64,000 nucleotides of DNA from positions 1 through 64,000 of the forward strand of contig JAKMXF010000221.1 in assembly GCA_024704765.1 (NCBI GenBank). The letters are read 5' to 3'. The DNA is from Oopsacas minuta (lineage: Eukaryota > Animalia > Porifera). Shown here in pieces: positions 22,701 to 24,082 of this stretch. Below the pieces are notes generated by a model that was not told where the DNA came from, did not search any database, and saw only the letters and a list, made by a program, of their open reading frames with translations. Within the stretch, counting starts at the first letter, position 1. Each line of letters opens with the position of its first letter. The translations under genes and the position numbers were made by a program.

Positions 22701-22898
22701 GTCAATAAAAATAGATCGTATTTGTTTACTAGTCAGGTTGTGATCCATTCTTATTTGTTGTTTATTATTATTGTTGCTTGATAAATAAGGCTGTTGTTGT
22801 TGTTGTTGTTGTTGCTGACGGTAGATTGTAAACTTTGATGAATGAAGGGTTCTATTGAATCTATCAGTTATTAGCTTCAAGGCAGAGCCTATTGACAT
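19797..22898 (-). CDS. AARS1: Alanyl-tRNA synthetase (cytosolic type) with a 50-aa N-terminal extension, intronless
   Basis: [53 protein letters not shown], editing-domain motifs NHTGTH and ELCGGTH, and C-Ala GKGGG. Confidence 0.97.
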   Translation of the reverse strand: [1033 protein letters not shown]

Positions 22899-24082
22899 AA
22901 GAGTTCGTGAATGGGACAGGAGAGATCCGATTCTATGAACAAGGAAAATACTCTCCCAAAGTTAATTAACGTAGGTTACAGTATAGTTAGGGTCGTTTAT
23001 AGTTTCCCCCACGACCCCCACGATGGGACCAAAATCCTATTCATAATGAAGAGAGATTTCATGATGATTAACTGAATTCAATACTAATGCCATGGGAAAA
23101 CGACCCTGTGTATATATAGCGACTGGTCACGGCTTAAAAATCAAAGAAAAGAATTTTGAGACTTTTTAAAACTTAATGAACTGATTAGATACAAATTAAA
23201 TGTGACAGCCATGTAATTAATACTTCAGTGGCTCAATTAATCAGTTATGAGTGTTGATATACAAGATTCAATAAAGTCGGTAACTAATTATACATTAAGA
23301 TGATTTAATGCAATCAATGCCATGTATACACCTCATCGATATTTCCTAATAATCCAATTCAAGAATTATGTACCTGAGCATTACAACTTCATGTTGAAAC
23401 AGATGAGGAGTTCATCTAAAAACATACATACTAGAATTCTGTTTTGAAATTCATCGCAGAACCCAGATTAAATCGTGAGAATCCGGGTATTAACAAGTAA
23501 TCAGTGGAATTTGTCAACAGATCGCGGTGAAAATAACTATTAATATATTTATTGGATCAAAGATCTTACCGAAATATGTACGAATCAGTTATAGAAAATT
23601 CTATCACAGTAAACTCCCGGAATATCGAACACGGGTATATCGAAGTCTAAAACTATACAAATAGTGGCCCAAGCCGTCAAATTGGTGGCAAGGTCCCCTA
23701 TTGTATCAAAATTTTGTATAATAACCTCCCTCGAGGAATAAGGTAAAAGCAAATAAGATTGACTAAAGTTTAATGTACATTTCTAAATGCATAAGAACTA
23801 CCTTCATATAATCTATATTCAAGTGTTGGTATGCACTGGTAATACAATTTAATAATGTATAAGAATATTAGAGTAGGAACAAGTTGGCATCTCAACATGA
23901 CAATAATTATTAGCCAATTAAAGTTGTTGATCATTTATACAAAAAGTCATTCAAGAATTAAGTCATAACATGGAACGATACAAAATAGACTGGTTAGTAA
24001 TACAAAGGTTGAGTTGTAAAATTGGGCACGGTCAGTTGGCCAACAGACAGATGCTTTAACAATACATATGTCGCTGGGGTCA

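What the first reader, a model, noticed from the sequence alone, without database searches (positions are those of the whole stretch)
22748..22940. AlaRS with an optional mitochondrial-type presequence and a separate acceptor for each start
Seen: 50 aa precede the conserved start MDHNLT (22748). The first part is Arg/Ser-rich with a single acidic residue ([27 protein letters not shown]), followed by Q9 and N4. One acceptor lies 34 nt before Met1 (22934-33) and another lies inside the extension (tttacaatctaccgtcag, 22816-15). Established: single aaRS genes can encode both cytosolic and mitochondrial forms through alternative starts, and in trypanosomes through alternative trans-splicing. Inference: the same dual-targeting switch operates here and may replace AARS2.
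Basis: partly seen in the sequence, partly recalled or inferred. Interest (0 to 1): 0.7.

Follow-up and report, generated by a model that had tools for sequence, protein, structure and literature searches.

The report
Dual-start alanyl-tRNA synthetase in glass sponge

Summary
The intronless ORF 19797-22898 (minus strand, 1033 aa) is an AARS1-type AlaRS. Fifty in-frame residues precede the Met that aligns with the human start.

The window is Oopsacas minuta contig JAKMXF010000221.

- **Conservation:** seven syntenic glass-sponge loci keep the first AUG, an open frame and a 36-44 aa basic, amphipathic, acid-poor extension. In all of them the first AUG has a weak context (-3 U), the second a strong one (-3 A, +4 G), and no other ATG lies between.
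- **Known layout:** this two-AUG arrangement is described for fungal and plant AlaRS. Corals and Corticium show it too.
- **Literature:** AlaRS is reported as a single lineage with no separate mitochondrial gene in the animal ancestor, so "replaces AARS2" is better read as the ancestral state.
- **RNA:** contigs show a foreign 18-nt leader joined at AG 22890/89 and AG 22876/75. Both lie just downstream of the first AUG, so these mRNAs can only make the short form. A contig break implies a further junction at AG 22952/51.
the internal one (22816-15) is one of nine AGs in the extension, is not conserved and was not seen. The upstream one (22934-33) is conserved in close relatives but was not seen.

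Absence of a second AlaRS gene could not be tested. Verdict: a new member of a known kind, of modest interest.

The parts
19797..22898 (-). Long AlaRS reading frame, 1033 aa, intronless, stop codon included
   Evidence: annotated as a 1033-aa product in GCA_024704765.1
22896..22898 (-). First AUG (Met1) in weak context: U at -3 and U at +4
   Evidence: AUG and weak context kept in all eight glass-sponge loci
22818..22898 (-). Presequence-like part, residues 1-27: net charge +4, one acidic residue, 7 Ser/Thr, amphipathic (maximum hydrophobic moment 0.68)
   Evidence: protein-level conservation
22749..22817 (-). Linker of the extension: Q9 (22791-22817), N4 (22764-22775) and the conserved Q-I/V-R before Met51. 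The Q and N runs are specific to O. minuta
22746..22748 (-). Second AUG (Met51), the canonical AARS1 start, in strong context: A at -3 and G at +4
22889..22890 (-). Observed spliced-leader acceptor AG. The exon starts at 22888, 8 nt behind the first base of AUG1, so AUG1 is removed
   Evidence: table 7: run X4 loose end at 22890 carrying 18 foreign letters
22875..22876 (-). Second observed spliced-leader acceptor AG. The exon starts at 22874, so AUG1 is removed
   Evidence: table 7: the same 18 foreign letters at 22876
22907..22925 (-). Pyrimidine tract in front of the two observed acceptors. AG 22890/89 is the first AG after it
22951..22952 (-). Inferred upstream acceptor AG, which would leave a 52-nt leader and keep AUG1
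   Evidence: table 8: the 127x RNA contig begins at 22923, which places a k-1 overlap at 22923-22952 and an RNA-only branch at 22952/53. The DNA contigs of the same sample run through without a break
22933..22934 (-).
   Evidence: aligned and kept in L002 and L006-L008; no RNA junction among the rows shown
22815..22816 (-).
   Evidence: one of nine AGs in the extension; at most a nearby AG in L004 and none in L002, L003 or L005 (L006-L008 not aligned there); not among the junctions shown

Best explanation
[quoted passage not shown] It is probably the only AlaRS gene, and it makes two proteins from two in-frame start codons.

Translation from AUG1 (22898) adds a 50-residue head. Its first ~27 residues act as a mitochondrial presequence, giving the mitochondrial enzyme. 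Translation from AUG2 (Met51, 22748) gives the canonical cytosolic enzyme.

Two layers set the choice of start.
1. Spliced-leader trans-splicing at AG 22890/89 or AG 22876/75 cuts AUG1 off. These mRNAs, probably the majority, can only start at Met51.
2. A minor class is spliced further upstream (AG 22952/51 and perhaps 22934/33) and keeps AUG1. AUG1 has a weak context, no other AUG precedes Met51, and Met51 has a strong context. Such mRNAs would therefore yield the mitochondrial form plus some cytosolic form by leaky scanning.

Shown: the gene identity, the conserved extension, the start-codon contexts and the two leader junctions behind AUG1. Inferred: import competence, the upstream junction, the relative abundance of the mRNA classes and the absence of a second gene.
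For: - **Identity:** Pfam tRNA-synt_2c at 8.8e-197 plus tRNA_SAD and DHHA1. Human AARS1 matches at 6e-195 with Met51 on its first residue.
- **Source:** O. minuta contig JAKMXF010000221.
- **Conserved extension:** seven other syntenic glass-sponge loci keep AUG1, an open frame and a related 36-44 aa head.
- **Conservation boundary:** identity jumps at AUG1, from 0.23-0.50 over -30..-1 to 0.50-0.93 over +1..+30. Against L003 and L004, pN is 0.25-0.29 while pS is 0.66-0.82.
- **Presequence features:** net charge +3 to +4, 0-1 acidic residues and a hydrophobic moment of 0.53-0.68, near the top of the window's N-termini.
- **Start contexts:** U at -3 of AUG1 and A at -3 plus G at +4 of AUG2 in all loci, with no intervening ATG.
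- **RNA:** run X4 has gene depth around 1e4 against 127 in the spacer. It carries the same 18 foreign letters at two AGs behind AUG1, and that sequence is absent from the 64-kb window.
- **Upstream junction:** inferred from an RNA-only contig break at 22952/53.
- **Need for the enzyme:** the mtDNA has 22 tRNA genes and only trnW is reported missing (PMC4520895).
- **Literature:** AlaRS is a single lineage in the animal ancestor (PMC4558845). The two-AUG layout with -3 U is described for fungal AlaRS (PMC7049704).
Against: - No import predictor (TargetP, MitoFates) could be run. My composition scores are crude, and the relatives' heads are Lys-rich rather than Arg-rich.
- The extension evolves fast. 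dN/dS is about 1 between L003 and L004.
- Only 11 of 309 loose ends were shown. The RNA data are contigs, not reads, so the usage of each acceptor is unknown and no junction upstream of AUG1 was seen directly.
- Only 18 letters of the leader are known, so an AUG inside the leader cannot be excluded.
- The lack of intervening ATGs is not significant in any one species (P 0.16-0.31).
- A second AlaRS gene in the genome was not excluded.
Confidence: 0.6

Rival explanations
1. The gene is dual-localised through two AUGs by leaky scanning alone. In this reading most mRNAs are spliced upstream of AUG1, and the two junctions behind AUG1 are minor or noisy acceptor use with no role in targeting.
For: The weak AUG1 and strong AUG2 contexts and the AUG-free interval are kept in all eight loci. 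The acceptors behind AUG1 are not: AG 22890/89 is shared only with L002 and L006-L008, and AG 22876/75 with none. Relatives have an AG 9 nt upstream of AUG1 that O. minuta has lost. Leaky scanning is the described mechanism for fungal AlaRS (PMC7049704).
Against: The only leader junctions shown for this gene lie behind AUG1. They were kept among the 'best supported' rows. AG 22890/89 is the first AG after a strong pyrimidine tract.
Confidence: 0.2
2. In O. minuta the extension is no longer translated. Trans-splicing removes AUG1 from essentially all mature mRNA, and the region is simply a 125-140 nt leader. Mitochondria would then obtain AlaRS from another gene or by presequence-independent import.
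For: Both junctions seen remove AUG1. O. minuta has lost the AG that precedes AUG1 in its relatives. Q9 and N4 runs have expanded inside the extension in this species only.
Against: AUG1 and the reading frame are intact, with no stop or frameshift over 150 nt. Two candidate acceptors remain upstream of AUG1: AG 22934-33 and the 22954-22951 AGAG pair, of which 22952/51 coincides with an RNA-only break. The literature reports no separate mt-AlaRS lineage in early animals.
Confidence: 0.12
3. The extension is translated but is not a mitochondrial presequence. It could be another sorting or regulatory appendage of a purely cytosolic enzyme.
For: No validated predictor was run. The heads in relatives are Lys-rich and evolve quickly.
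Against: The layout of a basic head followed by a retained canonical Met recurs in corals and Corticium, and in fungi and plants, where it is the mitochondrial form. A mitochondrial AlaRS activity is required.
Confidence: 0.08

Closest known systems
Two-AUG dual-localised AlaRS of fungi (Cryptococcus, Neurospora; Wallace et al. 2020, PMC7049704) and of Arabidopsis (Mireau et al. 1996, cited in PMC7600831)
   Same: One gene. A poor-context first AUG with U at -3, a presequence between two in-frame AUGs, and a strong-context second AUG at the canonical start.
   Different: The sponge gene sits in a genome that uses spliced-leader trans-splicing, and leader junctions fall on the coding side of the first AUG. 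Localisation is untested here.
Trypanosoma brucei IleRS, dual-targeted by alternative trans-splicing (Rettig et al. 2012, PMC3273800)
   Same: A long leader-spliced mRNA keeps the presequence-coding start. A short one lacks it and gives the cytosolic enzyme.
   Different: A different enzyme in a very distant organism. In trypanosomes both variants and their localisation were demonstrated. Here only the short class was seen directly.
Saccharomyces cerevisiae ALA1
   Same: A single AlaRS gene serving cytosol and mitochondria through an upstream in-frame start (listed as dual in PMC7600831).
   Different: Yeast uses near-cognate upstream codons (the 'DualNCC' class in PMC7049704), not an AUG.
Human AARS2 / dedicated mitochondrial AlaRS
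   Same: It provides the function that the long form is proposed to supply.
   Different: This gene matches AARS1 (6e-195) and matches AARS2 only weakly in the C-Ala domain (about 1e-4). It is not an AARS2 orthologue.

Membership tests
AARS1-type (eukaryotic cytoplasmic-lineage) class II alanyl-tRNA synthetase | Catalytic tRNA-synt_2c domain, tRNA_SAD editing domain and DHHA1/C-Ala domain in order | tested here: met
   residues 59-644 (655 bits), 741-800, 913-1021
AARS1-type (eukaryotic cytoplasmic-lineage) class II alanyl-tRNA synthetase | Closest solved relative is cytoplasmic AlaRS, aligned from the canonical start | tested here: met
   human AARS1 at 6e-195, with Met51 on human Met1
Two-AUG dual-localised aaRS | Two in-frame AUGs with no stop and no other AUG between them | tested here: met
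   true in all eight glass-sponge loci
Two-AUG dual-localised aaRS | Weak context at the first AUG and strong context at the second | tested here: met
   U at -3 and U/C at +4 versus A at -3 and G at +4
Two-AUG dual-localised aaRS | The segment between the AUGs is a mitochondrial targeting sequence | tested here: inconclusive
   charge, acid-poverty and amphipathicity fit, but no validated predictor or import assay was available
Two-AUG dual-localised aaRS | No separate mitochondrial paralogue in the genome | not testable with these tools
   no whole-genome search of the O. minuta assembly was available; literature only (PMC4558845)
Dual targeting by alternative spliced-leader trans-splicing (T. 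brucei IleRS type) | Leader junction downstream of the first AUG (short variant) | tested here: met
   the same 18 foreign letters at 22890 and 22876; absent from the window
Dual targeting by alternative spliced-leader trans-splicing (T. brucei IleRS type) | Leader junction upstream of the first AUG (long variant) | tested here: inconclusive
   only inferred, from the RNA contig starting at 22923; 298 loose ends were not shown
Dual targeting by alternative spliced-leader trans-splicing (T. brucei IleRS type) | The long variant's product is mitochondrial and the short variant's is cytosolic | not testable with these tools
   needs localisation experiments
AARS2 (dedicated mitochondrial AlaRS) | Orthology to AARS2 rather than AARS1 | tested here: not met
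   AARS2 chains match only the C-terminal domain, at 9e-5 to 2e-4

The most novel reading that the evidence does not exclude
In a metazoan, the choice of spliced-leader acceptor on either side of the first AUG decides whether an AlaRS mRNA can encode the mitochondrial presequence. This would be a sponge counterpart of the trypanosome IleRS switch, layered on an older leaky-scanning design. In O. minuta it may have been sharpened by loss of the AG that precedes AUG1 in its relatives.
Probability: 0.4. Interest if true: 0.55.

Novelty: new member of a known kind. Interest (0 to 1): 0.35.

Why it matters
It gives a concrete, conserved example of how a glass sponge supplies mitochondria with AlaRS from one gene, which fits the published inference that early animals had no separate mitochondrial AlaRS. 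It also shows that the public annotation (1033 aa) describes only the minor, long form. If read-level data confirm leader junctions on both sides of AUG1, this would be a rare metazoan case of trans-splice-site choice changing a protein's address. An unfollowed note on CysRS in the same genome hints that other single-copy synthetases may work the same way.

Tried and rejected
- **Second AlaRS gene:** the scan's notes had nothing under "alanyl", "AlaRS" or "alanine tRNA ligase". The genome paper's supplements list only the archaeal symbiont's AlaRS. No tool here searches the whole sponge assembly, so absence remains untested.
- **Full leader sequence:** only 18 letters were recovered. They match nothing in the window or in the eight fetched loci. 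Douris et al. 2010 is not held. The A. vastus paper gives no sequence, and its supplements are not held.
- **Transcript contigs from relatives:** cluster members were looked up in the hope of finding them, but all proved to be DNA assemblies.
- **ATG depletion between the two starts:** not significant in any one species, so I give it little weight.
- **An acceptor directly before Met51** (the usual pattern in this genome): an AG at -3/-2 is kept in all loci, but in O. minuta it is AAG behind an A-rich stretch (25% pyrimidine). It also doubles as the Arg codon and the -3 A, so I do not claim it.
rejected as a specific site.

Full report
**What is there**

On the minus strand an uninterrupted ORF runs from ATG 22898 to the stop at 19797 (1033 aa). 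It has the full AlaRS architecture: tRNA-synt_2c at residues 59-644 (8.8e-197), tRNA_SAD at 741-800 and DHHA1 at 913-1021. Its best solved relative is human cytoplasmic AlaRS at 6e-195, and the alignment places the sponge's Met51 (ATG 22748) on the human initiator Met. Mitochondrial AARS2 chains match only weakly, in the C-terminal domain.

An exact-protein look-up places the window on contig JAKMXF010000221 of GCA_024704765.1, the Oopsacas minuta assembly, where the gene is annotated as the 1033-aa form. Earlier notes of this scan name the same species.

**Checking the observation**

- Fifty codons lie before Met51. The first part is basic and Ser/Thr-rich with one Asp, followed by Q9 and N4.
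- AG 22934-33 lies 34 nt before Met1, behind a 75% pyrimidine tract.
- AG 22816-15 lies inside the extension.

The last point carries little weight on its own. Nine AGs lie within the 150-nt extension.

**Is the extension real coding sequence?**

A word-based protein search restricted to residues 1-200 returned four unnamed ENA proteins far above all other AlaRS. Their contigs are syntenic with the window, with the AlaRS gene followed by a family-2 glycosyltransferase gene and, where the locus reaches far enough, a calreticulin gene; a protein kinase gene lies upstream in the window, L002, L007 and L008. Cluster members added three more loci.

In all eight loci the frame upstream of the canonical Met is open and begins with an ATG. 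This includes two loci where the gene caller had started at the canonical Met or later. The heads are 36-50 aa long. They share the opening MS(I/V)(G/A)S, a central N-x-T-L-(Y/H) block and a terminal Q-(I/V)-R before the canonical Met. The most divergent locus, L005, has a different but equally basic 44-aa head. The Q9 and N4 runs occur only in O. minuta.

Nucleotide identity, anchored on the first ATG, is 0.23-0.50 over the 30 nt upstream and 0.50-0.93 over the 30 nt downstream. Between O. minuta and L003 or L004, synonymous sites are near saturation (pS 0.66-0.82) while pN is 0.25-0.29. The head is nevertheless fast-evolving: dN/dS is about 1 between L003 and L004, against 0.02 in the catalytic core. 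That pattern is usual for presequences.

I take the extension to be translated in this lineage.

**Is it presequence-like?**

No validated predictor was available. A simple scoring of the first 27 residues gives net charge +3 to +4, 0-1 acidic residues, 5-7 Ser/Thr and a maximum helical hydrophobic moment of 0.53-0.68 in all orthologues. Among 20 other ATG-started ORFs of the window, only three or four N-termini reach similar values. Two of those look like classical presequences themselves. The mature AlaRS N-terminus scores net 0.

This fits a presequence but does not prove import.

**Start-codon design**

In all eight loci the first AUG has U at -3 and U or C at +4. The second has A at -3 and G at +4. 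No other ATG in any frame lies between them. In O. minuta none lies in the 110 nt upstream either. The ATG-free interval is not significant in any single species (P 0.16-0.31).

This is the two-AUG layout described for fungal dual-localised synthetases, including AlaRS, with the same "unfavourable -3U" (PMC7049704), and for Arabidopsis AlaRS (cited in PMC7600831). The same layout, a basic head followed by the retained MD-x-x-L start, appears in AlaRS of the corals Pocillopora and Porites and of the homoscleromorph sponge Corticium.

**RNA evidence**

One reads call was allowed.

- **Which run is RNA:** runs X1 and X3 are DNA, with flat depth of about 90-120 and Nextera ends. Run X4 is RNA in all but label. 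Its depth is about 1e4 to 3e4 over the AlaRS and kinase genes and exactly 127 over most of the spacer.
- **Junctions seen:** X4 contigs carry the same 18 foreign letters beyond 22890 and beyond 22876. Each boundary sits on the A of an AG, which suggests that the leader itself ends in AG. The acceptors are then AG 22890/89 and AG 22876/75.
- **The leader is foreign:** the 18 letters occur nowhere in the 64-kb window, even with two mismatches. Spliced-leader trans-splicing is documented in glass sponges (PMC10282587; PMC7986045) and was noted repeatedly in this genome by the scan.
- **Consequence:** both junctions lie behind the first AUG, with exons starting at 22888 and 22874. AG 22890/89 is the first AG after the pyrimidine tract 22925-22907. 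Such mRNAs have no AUG before Met51, so they encode only the short form.
- **The leader probably has no AUG:** the two junctions fall in different frames, so a leader-borne AUG could serve at most one of them. The genome-wide habit of placing acceptors 1-3 nt before start codons also argues that the leader carries no AUG. Only 18 letters of it are known, however.
- **A junction upstream of AUG1 is only inferred:** the 127x spacer contig begins at 22923. With overlaps of 30 letters (visible in the X1 and X3 contigs), this places a branch between 22952 and 22953. The DNA contigs of the same sample cross that point unbroken, so the branch exists only in RNA. The position is what a leader ending in AG would produce at acceptor AG 22952/51.
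- **Rough abundance:** the small excess depth in the next bin (139.8 against 127) would correspond to a few hundred depth units for that class, a few percent of the gene body. This is a rough reading of summed contig depths, not a measurement.
- **What was not visible:** only 11 of 309 loose ends were printed. I cannot say whether AG 22934-33 is used, nor give proportions.

**Comparative view of the acceptors**

- AG 22934-33 and its pyrimidine tract align with the same feature in L002 and L006-L008.
- More distant loci have other pyrimidine-AG pairs 8-20 nt before the first AUG.
- AG 22890/89 is shared with L002 and L006-L008 only. AG 22876/75 is shared with none.
- The close relatives have an extra AG 9 nt upstream of the first AUG. 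O. minuta has lost it, so the first AG after that pyrimidine tract now falls behind the AUG.

**Need for the enzyme and the AARS2 question**

The O. minuta mitochondrial genome encodes 22 tRNAs, with only trnW reported missing (PMC4520895). AlaRS activity is therefore needed inside the organelle.

Pett and Lavrov (PMC4558845) list AlaRS among families in which one lineage was lost early in eukaryotes and was not re-duplicated before animals. Their data set includes the glass sponge Aphrocallistes vastus. A single dual-use gene is thus the expected ancestral state, not a replacement of AARS2.

I could not search the whole assembly for a second AlaRS gene. The scan's notes and the genome paper's supplements gave nothing relevant. 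A separate mitochondrial AspRS gene is noted elsewhere in this genome, so dedicated mitochondrial synthetases do exist for other amino acids.

**Conclusion**

The most likely reading is a dual-start, dual-localised AARS1-type AlaRS conserved across glass sponges. Spliced-leader acceptor choice around the first AUG, plus leaky scanning, sets the ratio of the two forms. The kind of mechanism is known from fungi, plants and trypanosomes. The sponge case is a new member, with a possibly new metazoan twist that still needs read-level confirmation.

The scan has not reported this gene before. An unfollowed note describes a similar layout for CysRS on another piece of this genome.

Noticed in passing
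window 22899-22912 compared with L002:2489-2500 and L006:1888-1899: Close relatives have an AG 9 nt upstream of the first AUG (gAGaactct). O. minuta reads cGAactct there, so the first AG after the pyrimidine tract falls 8 nt behind its AUG. This may be a lineage-specific shift of the leader acceptor across the start codon.
   Followed up: partly
proteins P0043, P0046, P0066 (Pocillopora, Porites) and P0062 (Corticium): AlaRS proteins annotated 'cytoplasmic-like' in corals and a homoscleromorph sponge have the same layout: a 31-34 aa basic head followed by the retained canonical Met-Asp start.
   Followed up: partly
proteins P0015, P0033, P0105 (hemichordates): AARS1-like paralogues carry long presequence-like heads but lack the canonical internal Met. 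They look like lineage-specific duplicates dedicated to mitochondria, distinct from classical AARS2.
   Followed up: no
window 22923-23942: In the RNA run, one unbroken contig at depth 127 crosses the whole 1-kb spacer between the kinase gene and AlaRS, where both genes sit near 1e4. It could be read-through precursor RNA or DNA carry-over.
   Followed up: no
window 39303-40184 (-) and 2907-3566 (-): The N-termini of these ORFs look like classical mitochondrial presequences: net +4 to +5 and no acidic residue.
   Followed up: no
window 22783-22824: The CAA/CAG run encoding Q9 was skipped as a repeat by the reads tool, and a gap row of run X5 was dropped there. The tract is absent or much shorter in all relatives, so its length is probably variable.
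   Followed up: no
window 19755-25493, run X5: A 2024 run labelled as another organism holds this region at 95-99% identity, including the spacer. It has many indels upstream of the first AUG and none reported inside the extension outside the skipped repeat. It is probably a close relative or a divergent population of O. minuta.
   Followed up: no
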